DNA of 63,677 nt, the filler included, from Octopus bimaculoides (Eukaryota), in NCBI RefSeq assembly GCF_001194135.2. It is 7 parts of 6 records of this genome, joined end to end, with 100 filler letters (N's around TTAATTAATTAA, not from the genome) between each part and the next. Parts side by side here need not be neighbours in the genome. Positions count along the whole stretch, not along the records: positions 17,001 to 24,046 come from NC_069009.1; 6 more parts are not named here. The stretch is one strand, 5' to 3'. Both the position numbers and the translations under genes were made by a program. Below the pieces are notes generated by a model, which made no database searches, had not been told where the DNA came from, and saw nothing but the letters and a program-made list of their open reading frames with translations. This document shows, piece after piece, positions 6,576 through 24,046 of the stretch. Within the stretch, counting starts at the first letter, position 1; the number at the start of each line of letters is the position of its first letter.

Positions 6576-8531
6576 TTGACTCGTATTTATATTAAAGAGG
6601 ANNNNNNNNNNNNNNNNNNNNNNNNNNNNNNNNNNNNNNNNNNNNNNNNNNNNNNNNNNNNNNNNNNNNNNNNNNNNNNNNNNNNNNNNNNNNNNNNNNN
6701 NNNNNNNNNAGAGAGAGAGAGAGAGAGAGAGAGAGTGAGAGAGAGAGGGGGGGGAGAATGGGCGAAAAATTGCGTCAAGTAGTGTAATATTTAGGAATTT
6801 GTGATATTAGAAAGCAAAGCATAATTAGAATGAGAAATGTAAGTGTTTTGAATGCGAGATGTCATAGAGTTTGCAAAAATGAAACCCTCGGAGGGGTGAT
6901 AGGTTAGGATAAAAAGTAGGGCAGTTTCTTATATAATAAAAGTGGTAAAGTTCCCACATGTAAGGAAAAGGATCAGTAAAAAAGACAAAAAAAGAAGGGA
7001 ATCTTGGTCGGAGAATGGCCGTGTAAAACATTAACGAAGAACTAAAACAAAACGAAGCAGATGAGAAGCGTAGTGTATGTGATAAGATAAAGTTTAAGGG
7101 TTTTGGAATGGAGATGTAATAGGGACAGGAAAGAAAAAAAAGGGGCCGGACGTCTTGGGAATAACAGACAGCTTGGGAAAGGGAGACTGACAGGTGCAAT
7201 TAGGTTGTGTAAGGGGTACTGGGATGGCATTAGGGGCCTCTGAAAAGCGACGTTAATTGCAGCAGCAGCAACAACAACGTCAGTGGTAGTAGCTCCAGGA
7301 ATGATGCCACCACCACCACCGCCACCACCACCACCACCACTATCACAACAACAACAGCATCAACAACAGCAACGGTAGCAAAAATATTGGCAATAACAAA
7401 CGATAAGGTCGGCCAAACTAAAAGCATGTCCACAGATCGTGGGTTAACCGGTTCGAGGTTATCAGCCGGTTAATATTTTTATTTTCTTCCTTGGTTGTAA
7501 ATATTTAATTCCAAGCTTCTATGGAAATGGTGGCAGACTTTATAGTTTTCCACTTAAATATCCGTAGACCTATTGCTTCCTAATCTTTTCCTTCTCTTAA
7601 AACCTCCAATTCCTTTTCCTAACAATTCTAATTATTCTCGCTCTGTCTGTCTGTCTGTCTCTCGCTCAATCTCTCCGTGTCTCGTTTCATGTAAAAAATA
7701 ATAATAAACATATACTTGCTTGCCGTGTTAGAAAACAAAATGACAGCATAGGCTAACTTGCTCCTGTGTATATACTATTTCTGGGAGTAAGACGGGATGG
7801 CTACGGCTGGAATGTGTTTTATTATAGGACTGATCTAAGATTAATCAAGAAAGCCACCACCGCTACCACCTACTTCACCGACAAGTACAACCACGACCAC
7901 CACGACTAACCCTAACCACTACAAACACAAACATTTTGTATTGCACCTCCATCATAAACGTAATCACCAACCCCACCCCGACCACCACGACAGCCACGAT
8001 CATCACTGCTACCGCTAACACCACAACCACCACCCTCTCCAACACCATCGCCACTATGACCATCACGACGACAATGAATACCACCACCACACCACCACCA
8101 CCACCATTGAATTGTCTTTGAACCTTAAAAGCCTCGATTCAGTTATCAAAACAAGACAAAGTGCTACGGCAGGAAACTTGCTCCAGTGTGCCGTGGCTGT
8201 TGCTGACGTAAGCCTGTTGATGCCATAAAGCTTTCTTTTATAAAAACCACGGCCCTCTTCCGACAGCCTTCTCTCGGGAGACCAAACTCAGCGACAATAG
8301 TTATATTGTAGGAGATATTTAAATGAAATGCAACGTGGGCTATGTATGCGCGTGTGTGCGTGAGTGTGTGTGTGTGTGTGCGTTTGTGTGTGTGTGTGTG
8401 CGTACGTGTGTGTGTGTGTGTATGCATGCGTGAGAACACGTTTCTGCAAAGTTGTGTGTAGTTAATGGATCAATGTGCCTAAATATCTTTCCATTTTGCT
8501 CTCTCTGCGTTTATATACATACATACATACA

Positions 8532-15065: not shown

Positions 15066-17105
15066 ATATTATTATCCTTTACATACCAGATAAATGTGGA
15101 GAGTGAAGTAGCATGGCATCTTTGTGCATATTCAAATGTCTATATTATTGAATGTGTATATATATTAAAAGTGGAGATTTATGAGTCATATACAACTTTT
15201 TGTTTCACTGTCAACTAATAATGTAGAAAGACACATACCATTGCCAGAGATATAAGGATTGTAATAATTCCAGAATAGGGACATTTTTCGCGAATTTATA
15301 ATGAAAAAGTTTCTTCTACTTAATATTGGTTTCGGCAACATCGATGCATTTGGTGCATTTTCAGTAAATCTTACTGTTATTTTCGGTGAAAATATAATAT
15401 CCATGGTCCTTCATAAGTTATAGGAAAATTATGTTATATTTGAACGATCACTTAAACTATAAAGAGGATTGTACCATATCATCTTTCGTACATTGCTTTT
15501 AGATTTATCAATATTTGTATTATTTCATACGTAAATATGTAATGCATTCTATCGATCTTGCTGCTGCTATTGAAAGCGGTATTGTAGGAATTAGAGGCTA
15601 GGCGAAAGGATTACTCGTCAGAGAAAAAGTTGGAAATACACTTTTGATTTTACTAATTGTCTCAAATATGTAACGCTACTAATTGACAGACCTCAGCCTC
15701 ATCAGCAGATTTTGTAGCTACATCAAACAATACATGGCCATTATGTTTAACACTAAAATAATTATCGTAAAATAGAAAAACATTTCATTATTTGTATACC
15801 ATTAATCGCGGAAACACTAATTGGAATAAAACATCTACCAAATCAAAAAGCTTTTCAGCGACAGATAGAATTCTATGATTTCAAATACGAAAAATTTACA
15901 AAGACGCTTATTATCTATATTACTGGGATAGAATATTAATCCCCTTGAAACATCTGACCTGCCTAATGCTAAATACGATGGAAACTAAAACACTATTCAC
16001 TTGTCATATTTATTTCGTATTTGTCTCGATTTATTAAGTTGCATTTGGAAATATCAAGAAAATTATACTTATGGTATTTAAATGTAATGTATGGTTTGCG
16101 TAAGGCTGAAGATTTATTCTACTCCATCATCAATTCGTAGCGTGATAGGTTTCCCTTTCTTTGTTTTACGGTACTTGAGCCGGTGGAGCATTCGATATGT
16201 GACAGTTGAAGGTGTGAGAAAGCTGCAACAACAACTGAGTGGTACTCATTATAGTTGCAATGTGAAATGAAGTGCCTTGCTTAAGGATTGATTGCACCGG
16301 GTTTAGGAATTGTTCCCCAGCTCTTGTGATAACGACACGAAATACTCTTAATTACCAGGCCACACGCACATTCATACACAGTGTTCGGACTAAATAAGAC
16401 GTTTCCTTATTTAAGAAAGGCTTGGTGTATTGGTGAACAGTCAACGGCGTTGGAGAGCATAAAGATTAAAGTTGTAGATAAGAAGAGCTCACATTGATGT
16501 CTGGAAGCCATCTGAATTTTGGAAAGGAGTTACCTGAATTATGATCATTCGCATCGGGTATCAAAATGCTGACGTCATGACTGCTGCTCAATGATCTGTG
16601 AATGCTGTAAAAGTTTTCTGATAGATGAAGCTCATTGTTGTGTTCTATGAATGTTCTACGTTTGCAGAAATATGATCGTGTCCCAGTATTATATATATAT
16701 ATATTGAATTGTTTCTATTCAGTTAGTCTATGAAATAATTATAACGATATAAACTCGTATTCATAGGGGGGCCCCTTTAATAGATGCTGCTGATCGATAC
16801 ATTCCAGTGGATATGTGTGTGTGTATTAATATGCACACACATACACTCTCTCTCGTGCGCGCATATATATATGTTTATATAAATATATATATATATATAT
16901 NNNNNNNNNNNNNNNNNNNNNNNNNNNNNNNNNNNNNNNNNNNNTTAATTAATTAANNNNNNNNNNNNNNNNNNNNNNNNNNNNNNNNNNNNNNNNNNNN
17001 CCCTAGGCATAACACAGACATGAACTTCTAACTTGTTGTCTCTTGAGGTTTCTGGGTGAGACTTGGATCCAACTTGTACAAATGCAAAGCAAAAGTCAAA
17101 CATAA

Positions 17106-17193
<88 letters not shown>

Positions 17194-17236
17194 TATCTGT
17201 TTTCTATACATGCCAAAACTTTGTTTTGCATTTCAG

Positions 17237-17356
17237 ATATAGACAAATGTAGATGGATCGATCGATGTGGTAGACACGGTAGATGCTATAACACACTAGG
17301 ATCTTACAGATGTTTATGTAATCGAGGATATCGTTGGGACGGGAAGACATGTGTTG
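17237..17356 (+). CDS. Calcium-binding EGF-like domain exon A (6 Cys)
   Basis: ttttgcatttcag|...|gtaagt; 120 nt, phase 1-1; (D)IDKCRWIDRCGRHGRCYNTLGSYRCLCNRGYRWDGKTCV(G) fits the cbEGF C-x-N-x2-G-S-Y-x-C-x-C pattern. Confidence 0.95.
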
Positions 17357-17439
17357 GTAAGTAAAAATGAATAAACAACAATAAGAATCCATTCATAAGT
17401 ACAATTAGCTTCTGGCTGTTATAATCCTTTCTAGAAAAG

Positions 17440-17872
17440 GCAGAATGTTTGAAATTGTGTGGGTGGGGGATGAGTCGAGTACATTGACACCAGCGTTACA
17501 CTGGAACTTAATTTATCAACCCGAAAGGATGAAGTGCAAAGACGACCTCAGCGGAATTTGAGCTCAGAACATATAGACAGTTGAAATACCGTTAAGCATT
17601 TCGTCCGGTGTGCTAAACTATTCTGCCAGTTCATCGACTTAATATTGATGATAATGGTTTCAAAATTTGCTAAAAGGGCAGCAATTTGGTTGGGGGAGGG
17701 GATAGGTCGATTATATCGATCCCTGAGTTCAACTGGTACTTATTTAATCGACCCCCAAAAGAATGAAAGGTAAAGTCGACCTCGGTGGAATTTGAATTCA
17801 GAACGAAGCGAAGGGTTAAATGCCGTTAAGCATTTCGTCCAGCATGCTAACGATTATGCCAGCTCGCCACCC
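17440..17872 (-). mobile_element. Two tandem family-A SINEs in the intron after exon A
   Basis: Two copies of gacctc(a/g)gcggaatttga...tcagaac; the same pair recurs at 20200-20615. Confidence 0.8.
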
Positions 17873-17950
<78 letters not shown>

Positions 17951-18374
17951 CAACAACAACAACATCATCGAAAAATACCTTAGAAATGAGAACCCAAGTT
18001 CGAAATTTCCCCAAGACACCTGAAGAATGTTATGTGGTAACAATAGACAAGATGAGGACAAAGATCCGTCGAATTTAAATAATGTAAATAATGGACATAA
18101 TTCTTCGTATCTTAAATATAGAACTGTAAAAAAACTGTTACTTTAAAGGTCTGTGTCGTATTACATGAAGATATTTCGCTACTACATCTGCCGTTTCCTC
18201 TCCCAAAGGTTTTAGTCATTCTGTAAATTCTCTTTTCCTTCACTCGCCTTAGGACGCTGGGTGCGTCTCGGTGAGTGACCGTAACAAGCATGCAGATTAA
18301 ATGTAAATAATAATAATAATGATGATAATAACATTTTCATATCATATTGCAATACATATATATTACTGTTTCAG

Positions 18375-18491
18375 ACATCAATGAATGCGCAAGTATAGCT
18401 TTAAGGAAATATTACAAGTGTTATAACACACCAGGTTCTTTTTATATTGCTTGCATGGAAGGCTTTGAAGAGATCAAGAAGTCCTGTATTG
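18375..18491 (+). CDS. EGF-like exon B with only 4 Cys (C2 and C4 absent)
   Basis: tactgtttcag|...|gtaagt; 117 nt, phase 1-1; (D)INECASIALRKYYKCYNTPGSFYIACMEGFEEIKKSCI(G). Confidence 0.92.
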
Positions 18492-18952
18492 GTAAGTACA
18501 AACAACAATAACAAGAACAATAACTACAACAACAGTATTAGAGGCATATATGTCTGAGTGTGTGCACGGGCACCAGTGTGTATGTACGGGTACGTTTGAT
18601 ATGCAGCCGATGAATAAAAATAATCAATTAACATCCATGTTCCATGCTGGCATGTGTTGGACGGTTGGGCACGATCCGAAGGTACTCAAGATTGCATCAT
18701 TCCTCGATGTCTGCTTTGTTATTATTTTTGTGGATTGAGGCCGTTCCAAAACAGCCACCATTTCACAGCATATACTGAGTTTGAAGTTTCCGTGACTTGA
18801 ACTGGGGCCAGAGTAGAAAAGAAAGAAGAAGGAGGTAAGAGATCAGGTGTTTAAGTATGTGAGAAGGGAGCAGAAGAGGTTCTGACCGTACAGAAACAAC
18901 GCGGTTACTCACTTTGAGGTCGATCAAATAGGACTTAATAATAATAATAATG

Positions 18953-19031
<79 letters not shown>

Positions 19032-19820
19032 CAACAACAACGACAACAATAACAGCAACAACAACAACACCAACATCAACACCAACAATTATACACTCCT
19101 GACAACAAAAATGAACACACATTGCCGCAAACACCTCAACAACAGGGAGGTGTATCAGGCGATGCAGTAGAAATTTTCCTGAAAGCATGAAATGTTTAAT
19201 GATAACAAGCAGTAGCTCCCATGGCTTCTGATTTTAATTGATTGGAAGTGTTATCATGTACTTTGCTTTGTCTTGGTATAAAAGATGGGTTACAGCAAAT
19301 ATTCTGCTCAATACCACAGATTTTCTTGCCCGGATGCAGTAGCAGACAGTGGCTCTCATGGCTTCTGATCTTAATTGATTGGAAGTGTTATCATGTACAT
19401 TGTTTTTTCTTGGTATAAAAAATGGGCTACAGCAAATATTCTGCTCCATACCACACATTTGCTTTCGGTTGTTTGATCAGTAGTAGTGGGGCAGCATCAT
19501 AGCCATGTGTTGAGAGGAATTCTTTGGGGTTTGAATAATTCACCTTTGGAAATATGGGTGTTTTACTCAAAATCCTTAAACAAACCTTATTCAGGGATCT
19601 TTTGAGCGGGATAGGCTACTCGATCTGAAGAAAATTCTAACTGGGCCGCACCTTCAAGGTCATGCGCTGTTTATCTTGATATGAGATCACCATGCCGCGC
19701 ACATATGGTTGTGATGCATACACCTGGTGTACCCTTATCAGACGGGTAGTCATGATGGGTATAATGGGTTTCGTATATTTTACCCCAGTGTCAGTTTGAT
19801 GGCATGCACTGCTCTCTCCC

Positions 19821-19888
<68 letters not shown>

Positions 19889-19995
19889 CTATTCCACTAT
19901 GAGCATAAAACCTGATATTTGGGAGAGGGGTATAGTCGATGACATCGACCCCAGTGTTTCACTATACATGCTAAAAATTTCTCTTTGTTTTTCAG

Positions 19996-20115
19996 ACATA
20001 AACGAATGCTTACAGAGTAACCCATGTGGTACAAACGGTAGATGCTATAACGCACTAGGATCATACAGCTGTTTCTGTTATCGAGGATATCGTTGGGACA
20101 AGAAAACATGTGTCG
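19996..20115 (+). CDS. Calcium-binding EGF-like domain exon A' (6 Cys)
   Basis: Pyrimidine-rich acceptor ending ttcag, donor gtaagt; 120 nt, phase 1-1; (D)[39 protein letters not shown](G). Confidence 0.95.
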
Positions 20116-20199
20116 GTAAGTAAAGATGAATAAACAACAACAACACTATCAACAACAACAATTAGCTTCTGGCTGTTATAATCCTTTCTATTAAAGGCA

Positions 20200-20615
20200 G
20201 AATGCCTGAAAATTTGGGGTGTAGGAGATGAGTCGACTACATCAACATCAGCCGTGATACTGTACCTTAATTTATCAGCCCAAAAGGTTGAAAAGAAAAA
20301 TCGACCTCGGCGGAATTTGAACTCAGAACATAAGGATAGGCGAAATACCTCTATGCATTTCGTCCGGTGTGCTAAACGATTCTGCGAGTTTATCGACTCA
20401 GTCTTGGTAATTATAGTTTCAAAATTTACCAAAAGGGCAGCAATTCTGGATTTGGTGATAAGTCAATTATATCAACCCAAGTTTGCAACTGGTACTTACT
20501 TTATCGACCCCGAAAGGATTAAACATAAAATCGATCTCGGCGAACTCAGCGATGGGCAAACTAGCACTAAGCATTTCGTCCAAAGTGCTAACAATTCTGC
20601 CTAATCGCCGCCTTA
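20200..20615 (-). mobile_element. Two tandem family-A SINEs in the intron after exon A'
   Basis: Paralogous to 17440-17872. Confidence 0.8.
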
Positions 20616-20695
20616 AATAATAATTATGATGATGATGATGATGATGATGAAGATGATGATGATGATGATAATAATGATGATTGTGATGATGATAG

Positions 20696-20735
<40 letters not shown>

Positions 20736-20736
20736 C

Positions 20737-20801
<65 letters not shown>

Positions 20802-21224
20802 TACAATGATAATAATAATGATCGGCTATAGCATTCATTCTTGCCGATAATTCTTTCCTTGTGTTGCATCATGATTTCATGAATTGTTCGTGGGTTTCCC
20901 ACAAGAAATCTTATTGACATCCCATCTCTTTCTTCCTCTCTTTATTTCTATATACTCGTGCATATATCTGTACATAAACATGTATATGAGTAACGTGGTT
21001 ACATTATATCGCCTCCATAACCTCACTGATTATCATTATCACCATCGTCCTACCTATACCATTAAAGATATATCAAAAATAAGATGGGTCCAGGTATATT
21101 GCAGCCGATATTCGTCGCTATTTATCAAATATTCACCTTTCGCTCCCTGTACATTGGTCTATACTAATCAGTCCTCTGCCACCATTCTATCTTTTCATAT
21201 ACGATCTGTTTACGTTTGCAGTTC

Positions 21225-21600
21225 GTGGAGGCGCAATGGCCCACTGGTTAGGACAGCGGACTCGCGGTCAGAGGATTTCGGTTTCGATTCCTAGACCGGG
21301 CGTTGTGAGTGTTTATTGAGCGCAAACACCTAAAGCTGCACGAGGCTCCGGCAGGAAATGCTGGCCAACCCTGCTGTACTCTTTCACCACAACTTTCTCT
21401 CACTCTTTCTTCCTGCTTCTGTTGTGCCTTATTTCAAAGGGCCAGCTTGTCGTACTGTGAATATCTCCGAGAACTACGTTATGGGTCCACGTGTCTGTGG
21501 AGTGCTCAGCCACTTGCACATTAATTTCACGAGCAGGCTGTTCCGTTGATCGGATCAACTGGAACCCTCGATGTTGCAAGCGACGGAGTGCCAACATGAA
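21225..21600 (+). mobile_element. tRNA-derived SINE (family C)
   Basis: Head ggaggcgcaatggcccactggttagg...ggtttcgattcc (A/B boxes); related copies at 42880-43180 (+) and 29890-30230 (-). Confidence 0.8.
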
Positions 21601-21909
21601 ACCTTTGCAGTTAAAACTTAATACTATCGTTTGTGCTACCTGCATGAATGGTAATCCAGGGGTCATTCTCAACTAATTTTTACTTCAATTACTAGTCATT
21701 TCAAGTGCTCCCATAATCATTGATTTGTAACCGTCTTGAGAGTAGGTGGAAGAGAAGCAGCTTGGTGAATAGACCAAATTCTATAGGTCTGTAAATACAT
21801 TCCACTGATTGTGAGGAGATCAGCTGTGGGTATTCTTGTGCGACAAGGAGACAAAAACGATACCAGTGGTGATCGGAGCGTTCGGCTCAATCCCATTGAA
21901 ACTGCAATA

Positions 21910-22515
21910 GTGGGTCATTATTTATATTGGAAGATATGTAAACAATACAAAATCAACACTCCTGCTTAGGGGCATGAACATCATCCTGAGCCACTCGTTG
22001 AAAGTAAAGATGTCACTATACTCTAGCATTTTGCAGTCAACACTTACACAATTCCCCAGTCTAATCGACTGAACATAGTCATTGAAGACAGAAAAGAAAA
22101 TGCTTGTACACTAATAGATGTAAGCGTTCCCACTGATAAAAATATATCAGTAACGGAATATGAGAAATTAAGTAAATATATCAACCTAAAAATTGAAATG
22201 CAAAAGATATGATATGTGAAAGCGAGAACTGTTCTTGTTATTATAGGTGCTCTAGGAATGATAAGAAAATTATGCTGAAAACATCTAGATAATATCCCAG
22301 GAGAACCATGTCTCAGTGACATTAGGGCTGCCAAAATTCTTAGTAAAAACATTATAAGTTTAAATGTCTGCGTTGTATTACATGAAGGTATTTCGCTACT
22401 ACCCCTGCCACATCTCTTCCCCAAGCTTTCAGTCATACAGCATTATTTCTTATCTTTCACTCGCCCTGGGAGTATCTCGTCGATGAATGGTAACAAACAT
22501 TCAAAAAGAATGTAA
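21910..22515 (+). mobile_element. R4/Dong-like non-LTR retrotransposon 3' fragment (restriction-like endonuclease domain), degraded
   Basis: Reads ...NRLNIVIEDRKENACTLIDVSVPTDKNISVTEYEKLSKYINLKIEMQKI*YVKARTVLVIIGALGM with stops; tail ends in (TAA)n and is paralogous to 18140-18310. Confidence 0.8.
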
Positions 22516-22520
22516 ATAAA

Positions 22521-22606
<86 letters not shown>

Positions 22607-22806
22607 NNNNNNNNNNNNNNNNNNNNNNNNNNNNNNNNNNNNNNNNNNNNNNNNNNNNNNNNNNNNNNNNNNNNNNNNNNNNNNNNNNNNNNNNNNNNNN
22701 NNNNNNNNNNNNNNNNNNNNNNNNNNNNNNNNNNNNNNNNNNNNNNNNNNNNNNNNNNNNNNNNNNNNNNNNNNNNNNNNNNNNNNNNNNNNNNNNNNNN
22801 NNNNNN

Positions 22807-22858
<52 letters not shown>

Positions 22859-22859
<1 letters not shown>

Positions 22860-23224
22860 TAATTGATGTATCAATACCAGCAGATGACAACGTTTCCCTA
22901 AAAGAAATGGAAAAACTTTCAAAATACAAAGCCCTGGAAATAGAGATAACTCGAATGTGGAATCTAAAAACAGAAACAATTCCTATCATAGTAGGTGCCT
23001 TAGGTATAATAACAATTGTTCAGACAAATACATAAAAAAAACACCAGGATTACAAATATATATAACATACAGAAAATTGCACTACTGGGTACTGCACATA
23101 CGCAAAACACTTTCAATACAGTAACCATAAGAGCACCACAGCAAACCACAGCACATACCCAAGGCGCACAGCACTGCGCTCGGTAGTGAAGTGAAATCAC
23201 GTTATAAAACTAAAACTACTGAAC
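22859..23224 (+). mobile_element. 5'-truncated R4/Dong-like LINE embedded in (TAA)n
   Basis: IDVSIPADDNVSLKEMEKLSKYKALEIEITRMWNLKTETIPIIVGALG...QKIALLGTAH; (TAA)n on both sides. Confidence 0.85.
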
Positions 23225-23235
23225 AATAATAATGC

Positions 23236-23281
<46 letters not shown>

Positions 23282-23355
23282 CATAATAATAATAATAATA
23301 ATAATAACAACAACAACATTTTCATGTCATATTGCAACACGTATTTCCCTTTCAG

Positions 23356-23472
23356 ACATCAATGAGTGTGCAACTATACATACAAGGCCGCCTTACAAGT
23401 GTTCCAACACGCCAGGTTCTTTTAATATTGGCTGCATCGTAGGCTTCCAAAAGATCAATGACAAATGTATAG
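23356..23472 (+). CDS. EGF-like exon B' with only 4 Cys (C2 and C4 absent)
   Basis: atttccctttcag|...|gtaagt; 117 nt, phase 1-1; (D)INECATIHTRPPYKCSNTPGSFNIGCIVGFQKINDKCI(G). Confidence 0.92.
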
Positions 23473-24004
23473 GTAAGTATTAGACGACAATAAAAACAAG
23501 AAGAACGGTATTATAAACATATATGTCTGAGCGTGTGCACGTATGTGTGTGTGTGTGTGTGTGTACGGGTACCTTTGCTATGTAACCGATGAGTAAAAAT
23601 AATCAATTAACATCCATGTTCCCTGCTGGCATGTGATGGGCGGTTAGACACGATCTGAAGCTGCTCCAGATTGCATCATTCTTCGACGTCTGCTTCGCTA
23701 TTGTTTCTTTGAATTGATGCCGTTCCAAACAGCGACCATTTCACAGCGCACACAGCGTATTTTTGGTAGCTTGATTAATACTGAGGCTGCAGATATTCTA
23801 GTCTAGGCACATGGCCCGACATTTTGGGGGAGAGGGGGCCAGTTACTTAGATCGACAGCAGTACGCAACTGGTATTTAATTTATCGACCCCGAAAGGATG
23901 AATGACAAAATCGACCTCAGGCAAATTTGAACTCAGAACGTTGTGGCAGGCAAAACACCGATAAGCATTTTGCCGGAGTGGTAACAACACTGCTAGCTCA
24001 CCGA

Positions 24005-24046
<42 letters not shown>

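What the first reader, a model, noticed from the sequence alone, without database searches (positions are those of the whole stretch)
18375..23472. EGF modules that lost precisely one disulfide pair, alternating with normal cbEGF modules
Seen: exons B and B' keep D-I-N-E-C1, C3-x-N-T-P-G-S-F, C5 and C6, but lack both C2 and C4 (C4 position is Ile in both). Known: EGF disulfides pair C1-C3, C2-C4 and C5-C6, so the two missing cysteines are partners and no free thiol is left. Splice sites and frame are intact in both paralogues. Inference: a functional two-disulfide cbEGF variant maintained in a 6C-4C-6C-4C array, possibly a lineage-specific matrix, adhesive or recognition protein.
Basis: partly seen in the sequence, partly recalled or inferred. 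Interest (0 to 1): 0.7.

Follow-up and report, generated by a model that had tools for sequence, protein, structure and literature searches.

The report
Octopus EGF modules missing one disulfide
An octopus gene for a small secreted protein has calcium-binding EGF modules that lack the two cysteines of one disulfide bond but keep every other hallmark; this variant is rare and probably functional, and it is not a new kind of domain.

Summary
The piece holds four + strand exons, all phase 1-1 and all with AG/GTAAGT splice sites. A (17237-17356) and A' (19996-20115) encode six-cysteine cbEGF modules. B (18375-18491) and B' (23356-23472) encode modules with only C1, C3, C5 and C6, and Ile at the C4 position. 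Both B modules pass Pfam EGF_CA.

The assembly gap lies inside an (AAT)n tract in the A'-B' intron and touches no exon.

The 6C-4C-6C-4C order comes from a tandem duplication of a two-exon unit, introns included. It is not a design rule: the matching Octopus sinensis gene ('LTBP2-like', XP_036369591.1) reads 6C-4C-4C. Its two 4C modules have the identical cysteine pattern and are part of RefSeq gene models. The 4C module corresponds to a normal six-cysteine module in octopus 'fibulin-1-like' paralogues, so the pair was lost once and then inherited.

Consensus positions are fully kept, while other codons diverged faster than the flanking introns. AlphaFold predicts a normal EGF rod.

The pattern is rare: 2 of 2,569 modules in other proteins. 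It recurs elsewhere, for example in a flatworm adhesion protein. No transcript of the window's own gene was found.

Verdict: a real, probably functional variant of a known domain, of modest interest.

The parts
17237..17356 (+). Exon A: six-cysteine EGF module, phase 1-1, 120 nt. It starts DIDKC, so Lys replaces the usual Glu/Gln calcium ligand.
   Evidence: Translation and splice sites. Pfam EGF_3 39.5 bits and EGF_CA 37.5 bits. It fails the EGF_CA pattern because of the Lys.
18375..18491 (+). Exon B: four-cysteine cbEGF module with C2 and C4 absent and Ile at C4; phase 1-1, 117 nt.
   Evidence: Pfam EGF_CA 32.6 bits against a cutoff of 27. The AlphaFold blocks covering this module have pLDDT about 97.
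19996..20115 (+). Exon A': canonical six-cysteine cbEGF module (DINEC...), phase 1-1, 120 nt; a paralogue of A.
   Evidence: Pfam EGF_CA 37.7 bits. The exon with its near flanks (19974-20143) is 81% identical to 17215-17384 (D8).
23356..23472 (+). Exon B': second four-cysteine cbEGF module with the same cysteine pattern; phase 1-1, 117 nt; a paralogue of B.
   Evidence: Pfam EGF_CA 29.6 bits. The exon is 74% identical to B at nucleotide level, while the flanking intron is 82% identical.
17215..19973 (+). First copy of the duplicated two-exon unit: A, intron, B, intron.
   Evidence: Direct-repeat families D6, D8, D13 and D14 have a spacing of about 2759. D7, D9 and D15 have a spacing of about 4980.
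19974..23750 (+). Second copy of the unit: A', intron enlarged by inserted repeats and the gap, B', and the start of the next intron.
   Evidence: The intron after B' (23555-23729) is 86% identical to the intron after B (18576-18750).
22607..22806 (.). Assembly gap inside an (AAT)n microsatellite in the A'-B' intron; it touches no exon.
   Evidence: The flanks are colinear with unit 1 (D11, D12, D9).

Best explanation
The piece is part of an octopod gene for a small secreted protein built of calcium-binding EGF modules, one module per phase 1-1 exon. The gene belongs to a family so far seen only in octopus. Family members have a signal peptide, an acidic linker, a short cysteine-rich domain and then a cbEGF array.

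In one branch of this family, the module at the third EGF position of the paralogues lost both C2 and C4 in a single ancestral event, together with one residue of the C1-C3 loop. The resulting two-disulfide module kept the calcium ligands (D-I-N-E, and Asn after C3). It also kept the aromatic packing residue, the C1-C3 and C5-C6 bonds, and an invariant Ile in place of C4. It therefore most likely still folds as an EGF module and sits in a calcium-stiffened rod.

The module has since been copied by exon duplication. Here it was copied as an A+B pair, giving 6C-4C-6C-4C. In O. sinensis it was copied alone, giving 6C-4C-4C.

Inferred consequences:
- The C1-C3 loop is no longer stapled to the main hairpin. 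About a third of the variable positions lie in that loop, and the surface as a whole diverges faster than the neighbouring introns. Both points fit a binding surface that is evolving quickly.
- Without C4, the Cys3-Cys4 loop required by Asp/Asn beta-hydroxylase cannot form, so the retained Asn is probably not hydroxylated.

Shown here: sequence pattern, exon structure, duplication, conservation across two genomes, family placement and predicted fold. Inferred: expression of this particular gene, real folding and calcium binding, and the binding role.
For: - Exons, frames and splice sites. EGF_CA scores above cutoff for both B modules.
- Tandem duplication including the introns.
- O. sinensis XP_029651374.2 and XP_036369591.1 contain the same 4C modules after a signal peptide, acidic region, Cys-rich domain and one 6C module. 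Their exons lie at L001 25455-25571 and 26004-26120 with AG/GTAAGT sites.
- In the alignment, the 4C module lines up with the six-cysteine module DINECRRxRVCGRYARCYNTPGSYYCKC of paralogues P0001, P0122 and P0123.
- P0001 lies about 130 kb from P0121 on the same chromosome.
- None of the 15 amino-acid differences between B and B' falls in the 13 pre-set consensus positions (P = 3e-4).
- Nucleotide divergence between B and B' is 3/39 in consensus codons, 27/78 in other codons and 57/309 in flanking intron. Other codons against intron give Fisher p = 0.003.
- dN/dS of B against sB1 and sB2 is 0.23 and 0.20, p = 0.002 and 0.001.
- AlphaFold model of A-B-A'-B': mean pLDDT 95.1, with the same two beta-hairpins in B and B' as in A and A'.
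- The best PDB fold matches are cbEGF rods: NELL2, uromodulin, Notch EGF11-13 and EMR2/CD97.
- AspH accepts the non-canonical Cys 3-4 disulfide form of EGF domains (PMC7278358).
Against: - No transcript or protein from the window's own genome was found. Splicing of B and B' here rests on the sister-species gene models and on conservation.
- dN/dS between B and B' (0.52), and between B' and the O. sinensis copies (0.41-0.87), is not significantly below 1. The exons are only 117 nt, so all rate estimates are noisy.
- AlphaFold builds on homology and would predict an EGF fold whether or not the missing bond matters, so the model says little about stability.
- The residue aligned with C2 is not conserved (Arg here, Met in O. 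sinensis), so there is no clear hydrophobic partner for the invariant Ile.
- The O. sinensis model ends five residues after the last 4C module. It does so by reading the ancestral last exon in a different frame from the paralogue. That could mean the gene is a shortened, partly decaying duplicate.
- The faster exon divergence could also come from gene conversion keeping the introns alike.
Confidence: 0.6

Rival explanations
1. The B-type modules are relics in a degenerating gene duplicate. The disulfide was lost under relaxed constraint, and the modules are tolerated as spacers or are on the way to being lost, with no specific function.
For: - The O. sinensis gene is a shortened relative of the 'fibulin-1-like' paralogues. 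It skips a good six-cysteine exon-like ORF at L001 27470-27586 and reads the last exon in another frame.
- dN/dS for B/B' and B'/sB1 is not distinguishable from 1.
- Module A has also lost a calcium ligand (DIDKC).
- No transcript evidence exists for the window's gene.
Against: - All consensus positions, the even cysteine count, the frame and the consensus splice sites are kept in four copies across two genomes and at least two separate duplications.
- dN/dS is 0.2 for B against the O. sinensis copies.
- Consensus codons diverge less than the introns: 8% against 18%.
Confidence: 0.2
2. B and B' are not coding exons in this genome. They would be exon-like remnants that the spliceosome ignores, so the real product is a plain six-cysteine array.
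For: No annotated or transcript-derived protein in the searched collections contains the window's own A-B-A'-B' sequence. In O. sinensis one 4C exon is optional: isoform X2 lacks it. Because all exons are phase 1-1, skipping would keep the frame.
Against: Both O. sinensis isoforms keep at least one 4C exon. The donor sites are the full GTAAGT consensus and the acceptors have pyrimidine tracts. There are no stops or indels in 117 nt at 26% divergence, whereas the flanking introns carry many gaps. Consensus residues are conserved.
Confidence: 0.12
3. The missing cysteines are an assembly or sequencing artefact.
For: The locus is repeat-rich and contains an assembly gap.
Against: Two separate codons are changed in each of four copies, in two independent genome assemblies, and always in the same way, with Ile at C4. 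The gap lies in an intron microsatellite, far from any exon.
Confidence: 0.01

Closest known systems
Octopus sinensis 'latent-transforming growth factor beta-binding protein 2-like' (XP_036369591.1, 266 aa; XP_029651374.2, 227 aa)
   Same: It has the same module types in the same order at the start (6C, then 4C). The cysteine pattern and Ile at C4 are identical, and each module is one phase 1-1 exon. Protein identity to the window's modules is about 74%. Non-coding sequence at the left end of the piece matches the region upstream of the 6C exon at 92%.
   Different: The array is 6C-4C-4C, not 6C-4C-6C-4C; there the 4C exon alone was duplicated (the two copies are 97% identical). Nucleotide identity to the window is only 74-92%, so the window comes from another species or from a paralogous locus. 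The RefSeq name is by similarity only: the protein has no TB domain.
Octopus 'fibulin-1-like' and 'wall 2-like' paralogues (P0001, P0122, P0123, P0124, P0125)
   Same: P0122, P0124 and P0125 share the full architecture: signal peptide, acidic stretch, Cys-rich domain ending CCKGW.....C, then a cbEGF array. P0123 keeps only the end of the Cys-rich domain, and P0001 is the cbEGF array alone. P0001 lies on the same chromosome as the O. sinensis gene.
   Different: All their modules have six cysteines, including the module that aligns with the 4C module.
Canonical cbEGF arrays: fibrillin-1, Notch EGF11-13, EMR2/CD97, NELL2, uromodulin
   Same: Sequence matches at E = 5e-8 to 7e-3 and fold matches at probability 1.0. 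They share the calcium-binding consensus and a rod of tandem modules.
   Different: In every aligned solved structure a Cys stands where B and B' have Ile, and a C2 is present.
Isolated C2/C4-less modules in other cbEGF proteins: adhesion protein 1 of the flatworm Theama mediterranea (UQT06002.1) and an unnamed Logan protein (P0237)
   Same: Each has a single module with C1, C3, C5 and C6 only, embedded among six-cysteine modules.
   Different: These are unrelated proteins with other residues at C4 (Ala, Phe). Each has one module in a long array, with no sign of duplication of the variant.
First EGF domain of MSP1-19 in Plasmodium species other than P. falciparum
   Same: By recollection it lacks the same C2-C4 bond and still has an EGF fold in solved structures.
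   Different: It is not calcium-binding, belongs to a parasite surface protein and is unrelated. I could not confirm this from the papers available here, so it is a lead from memory only.

Membership tests
Calcium-binding EGF domain (Pfam EGF_CA, PF07645) | Profile score above the curated cutoff | tested here: met
   B scores 32.6 bits and B' 29.6 bits against a cutoff of 27. A scores 37.5 and A' 37.7.
Calcium-binding EGF domain (Pfam EGF_CA, PF07645) | Calcium-ligand consensus: D/N-x-D/N-E/Q before C1, D/N two residues after C3, and an aromatic residue four residues further on | tested here: met
   B, B' and A' have D-I-N-E-C ... C-x-N-x-x-G-S-F/Y. Module A has D-I-D-K-C, so Lys stands at the E/Q position.
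Calcium-binding EGF domain (Pfam EGF_CA, PF07645) | Six cysteines forming the C1-C3, C2-C4 and C5-C6 bonds | tested here: not met
   B and B' have four cysteines. C2 is absent and C4 is Ile. The actual bond pairing cannot be tested with these tools.
Calcium-binding EGF domain (Pfam EGF_CA, PF07645) | PROSITE-type patterns EGF_CA, ASX_HYDROXYL and EGF_2 (patterns written from memory) | tested here: not met
   All four 4C modules fail all three patterns. A' and the O. sinensis A module pass all three. A fails only EGF_CA.
Calcium-binding EGF domain (Pfam EGF_CA, PF07645) | EGF fold: a major and a minor beta-hairpin | tested here: met
   This is a prediction only. AlphaFold gives the same strand pattern in B (54-59, 62-67, 71-74, 77-80) as in A', with pLDDT 94-98. 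Fold matches are cbEGF rods.
Calcium-binding EGF domain (Pfam EGF_CA, PF07645) | One module per symmetric phase 1-1 exon, as in fibrillin- and Notch-type genes | tested here: met
   Exons of 120 and 117 nt start with the second base of the Asp codon. The O. sinensis exons have the same structure.
LTBP / fibrillin | TB (8-Cys) domains (PF00683) | tested here: not met
   The O. sinensis homologue P0121 has no TB hit at E up to 1. The window's own gene is only partly in the piece.
Fibulin | C-terminal fibulin-type module (taken here to be Pfam PF22914, which the EFEMP1 hits carry; that identification is from memory) | tested here: not met
   P0121 and P0001 show only EGF-type Pfam families. P0121 ends five residues after its last EGF module.
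EMI-domain proteins (EGFL7, EMILIN, multimerin) | EMI domain (recalled as PF07546) ahead of the EGF modules | tested here: not met
   The Cys-rich N-terminal domain of four family members gives no Pfam hit even at E up to 10. The CCxGWxGxxxxC ending only looks EMI-like by eye.

The most novel reading that the evidence does not exclude
Octopods have turned a disulfide-depleted cbEGF into a fast-evolving recognition module. Losing the C2-C4 staple freed the C1-C3 loop and made the module unreadable by Asp/Asn beta-hydroxylase. The module's surface is now under diversifying selection, and the module is multiplied by exon duplication in a secreted protein family specific to the lineage.
Probability: 0.2. 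Interest if true: 0.55.

Novelty: new variant of a known kind. Interest (0 to 1): 0.3.

Why it matters
EGF modules are among the commonest extracellular building blocks, and their three disulfides are treated as defining. In human fibrillin or Notch, losing one cysteine causes disease.

This case is a natural, inherited and duplicated module that removed a whole bond cleanly and kept calcium binding. It is a ready-made test of how much the C2-C4 bond contributes to folding, rigidity and enzyme recognition in a cbEGF rod.

It also shows that motif-based annotation, such as PROSITE-type patterns, would miss such modules. The practical reach is limited: the domain class, the fold and the gene family type are all known, and similar isolated losses occur elsewhere.

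Tried and rejected
- Looked for proteins or transcripts of the window's own gene with two word-indexed searches and one full HMMER scan of 1.84 billion representatives. None was found. The full scan was swamped by giant multi-EGF proteins, so I used it only as a sample for counting cysteine patterns.
- Exact look-ups of P0002 and P0122 found no contig.
- Seven literature searches failed to find a paper that documents two-disulfide EGF domains or anything on this octopus family: four-cysteine EGF, MSP1 EGF disulfides (two searches), Cys2-Cys4, 'instead of three', octopus fibulin-1-like, and hEGF Cys14/Cys31. Only the AspH substrate paper was useful. The Plasmodium precedent stays unverified.
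- Tested the idea that the N-terminal Cys-rich domain is an EMI domain. Pfam gave no hit, and the AlphaFold confidence there is low (block means 52-77), so I did not run a fold search on it.
- Checked whether the gap could hide a frame problem. It cannot, because it is intronic.
- Checked the piece for tRNA genes and Rfam families. None were found.
- Rejected 'two independent losses in B and B''. The flanking introns are homologous, so it is one loss copied by duplication.
Full report
**What is in the piece.** The 7 kb piece (17001-24046) is AT-rich animal DNA full of (AAT)n tracts and short interspersed repeats. On the + strand there are four short exons, each preceded by a pyrimidine tract plus CAG and followed by GTAAGT. 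All four are in phase 1-1:
- A, 17237-17356
- B, 18375-18491
- A', 19996-20115
- B', 23356-23472

Joined, they read through without a stop as four EGF modules. A scan of all six frames found no other EGF-like exon in the piece.

**The observation.** A and A' have six cysteines in the usual cbEGF spacing. B (DINECASIALRKYYKCYNTPGSFYIACMEGFEEIKKSCI) and B' (DINECATIHTRPPYKCSNTPGSFNIGCIVGFQKINDKCI) have four. There is no cysteine between C1 and C3, and Ile stands at the C4 position of G-S-F-x-[C4]-x-C5. The missing cysteines are the two partners of the C2-C4 bond, which I know from the established EGF disulfide pattern.

Both B modules still pass Pfam EGF_CA, at 32.6 and 29.6 bits against a cutoff of 27. 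It is the only family they hit. They fail motif patterns that require C2 or C4; I wrote those patterns from memory.

**The gap.** The N run 22607-22806 sits between two (AAT)n tracts in the intron between A' and B', so no frame crosses it. Sequence left of it matches the stretch upstream of B in the first unit. Sequence right of it matches the stretch that runs into B. The order is the same in both units (families D11, D12, D9). The two sides thus fit one continuous locus. The true length and content of the gap are not known.

**Origin of the alternation.** A with its downstream intron is repeated 2,759 bases later (81-89% identity). B with its downstream intron is repeated about 4,980 bases later, and the intron there is 86% identical. 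The 6C-4C-6C-4C order is therefore a tandem duplication of a two-exon unit. The second A-to-B intron was enlarged by repeat insertions and the gap. B and B' are two copies of one event, not two independent losses.

**Relatives.** The best protein matches are two RefSeq isoforms from Octopus sinensis named 'LTBP2-like'. They consist of:
- a signal peptide;
- an acidic stretch that AlphaFold leaves disordered;
- a short cysteine-rich domain;
- one six-cysteine module;
- one or two four-cysteine modules (DINECAMIRLMHHYKCYNTPGSFYIDCMEGFQMIKEKCI and a 97% identical copy);
- five more residues.

In that genome each module is again one phase 1-1 exon with consensus splice sites. The window is 74-92% identical to this locus at DNA level. 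It therefore comes from a related species or a paralogous locus. Non-coding sequence at the left end of the piece matches the region upstream of the O. sinensis six-cysteine exon at 92%, which favours orthology.

Other family members were found only in octopus, under the names 'fibulin-1-like' and 'wall 2-like'. P0122, P0124 and P0125 share the full architecture; P0123 has only part of the Cys-rich domain, and P0001 is the EGF array alone. All their modules have six cysteines. In the alignment the four-cysteine module lines up with their module DINECRRxRVCGRYARCYNTPGSYYCKC. The pair was therefore lost once, together with one loop residue, after this gene split from those paralogues. One paralogue lies about 130 kb away on the same chromosome. 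The RefSeq names are similarity labels: the proteins have no TB domain and no fibulin C-terminal module. The cysteine-rich N-terminal domain matches no Pfam family.

**Is it maintained?**
- Between B and B', 15 of 39 residues differ, yet none of the 13 consensus positions fixed beforehand is touched (P = 3e-4). The same holds for every pair among the four copies.
- Nucleotide divergence between B and B' is 8% in consensus codons, 35% in the other codons and 18% in the flanking introns. The excess of the other codons over the introns gives p = 0.003.
- dN/dS is 0.20-0.23 for B against the O. sinensis copies (p about 0.001-0.002). It is 0.4-0.9 and not significant for the other pairs.
- There are no stops or indels in the exons, while the introns carry many gaps.

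Together this points to a constrained scaffold with fast-changing surface residues. The sequences are very short, though, and gene conversion of the introns could mimic the excess.

**Structure.** AlphaFold, run with a 48-sequence alignment, gives mean pLDDT 95.1. The B modules fall in blocks with means of 94-98, and they show the same two hairpins as the six-cysteine modules. The best PDB fold matches are cbEGF rods: NELL2, uromodulin, Notch EGF11-13 and EMR2/CD97. In every aligned solved cbEGF sequence a Cys stands where B has Ile. Such a prediction follows homology, so it does not show that the module is stable without the bond.

**How rare is it?**
- Among 423 cbEGF modules in the 212 close hits, 387 have six cysteines. 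The only C2/C4-less one is the O. sinensis module.
- Among 2,569 modules in 150 large cbEGF proteins, 2,421 have six cysteines, 82 have five and six have four.
- Two of those six lack exactly C2 and C4. One is in 'adhesion protein 1' of the flatworm Theama mediterranea. The other is in an unnamed protein from a Logan assembly.

So the clean loss is rare, about one module in a thousand, but it has happened elsewhere. From memory, the first EGF domain of MSP1-19 in Plasmodium species other than P. falciparum lacks the same bond. I could not confirm this from the available papers.

**Likely working.** The B module most likely remains a calcium-binding EGF unit in a rod-like secreted protein:
- The invariant Ile fills the place of the bond.
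- The C1-C3 loop, no longer tied to the hairpin, holds about a third of the variable positions.
- Human Asp/Asn beta-hydroxylase acts on EGF domains through a Cys3-Cys4 loop (PMC7278358). A module without C4 probably cannot be hydroxylated even though it keeps the Asn.

These last points are inference. The fast surface change and the flatworm adhesion-protein parallel fit it but do not show it.

**Weak points.** No transcript of the window's own gene was found. The O. sinensis model skips a good six-cysteine exon-like ORF at L001 27470-27586. It also reads the last exon in a frame different from the paralogue. The gene may therefore be a shortened duplicate. A relic under relaxed constraint remains a fair rival.

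**Verdict.** The feature is real and correctly described. It is a new variant of a well-known domain inside an octopus-specific family of small secreted cbEGF proteins. It is already present, unremarked, in RefSeq models of a sister species. Interest is modest.

Noticed in passing
window 17237-17251: Module A begins D-I-D-K-C instead of D-I-N-E-C. Lys replaces the Glu/Gln calcium ligand, so this six-cysteine module may not bind calcium at its N-terminal site. The O. sinensis counterpart has the normal DINEC.
   Followed up: partly
window 17102-17192, 17873-17947, 18936-19028, 19822-19888, 20737-20819, 22515-22606, 22807-22863, 23225-23307, 24008-24046: There are nine (AAT)n tracts of 13-31 units in 7 kb. 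Several sit directly at the 3' end of short interspersed repeats, as if they were the repeats' tails. One of them hosts the assembly gap.
   Followed up: partly
window 17462-17875, 20231-20616, 23827-24010: Copies of one short interspersed repeat occur in introns: two in tandem after A, two after A' and one after B'. The core reads ...TCGACCCCGAAAGGATGAA...GCATTTCGTCC... The same element occurs many times in the O. sinensis locus L001.
   Followed up: partly
window 21225-21420: A different repeat has four copies in L001, on both strands, at 80-88% identity. Its start looks tRNA-like by eye, but ARAGORN and Rfam report nothing.
   Followed up: partly
window about 22100-22330 and 22857-23010: By eye these are two decayed fragments that look like the C-terminal tail of a retroelement ORF (e.g. 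...IDVSIPADDNVSLKEMEKLSKYKALEIEITRMWNLKTETIPIIVGALG...). They lie on either side of the gap in the A'-B' intron. The stretch 22860-23277, which begins with the second fragment, also matches sequence upstream of the six-cysteine exon in O. sinensis.
   Followed up: no
window 19210-19464: A 137-nt unit is present as 1.9 tandem copies (90% identical) in the B-A' intron. Related copies occur in L001 at 7326-7468 and 7942-8010.
   Followed up: no
window 20620-20735: An (ATG)n / (GAT)n microsatellite of about 36 units lies directly next to an (AAT)n tract.
   Followed up: no
L001 27470-27586: There is an intact six-cysteine cbEGF ORF with AG/GTAAGT borders between the last 4C exon and the terminal exon of the O. 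sinensis gene. It is not used in either RefSeq isoform. It resembles the fourth module of the 'fibulin-1-like' paralogues.
   Followed up: partly
L001 about 31764-31781: The last coding exon of the O. sinensis gene gives G-I-G-T-I-stop. In another frame the same DNA reads ...ALAPSES-stop, which resembles the ...LAPSEG end of paralogue P0001. The terminal exon therefore seems to be read in a shifted frame in this gene.
   Followed up: partly
protein P0003 (ENA metagenome, 256 aa): This unidentified eukaryote-like protein has irregular EGF modules with various cysteines missing. They include a C-terminal one, DINECANPENVPAHSTCANTDASFVITCNTGF, that lacks C2 and has Ile at C4 like the octopus modules.
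   Followed up: no
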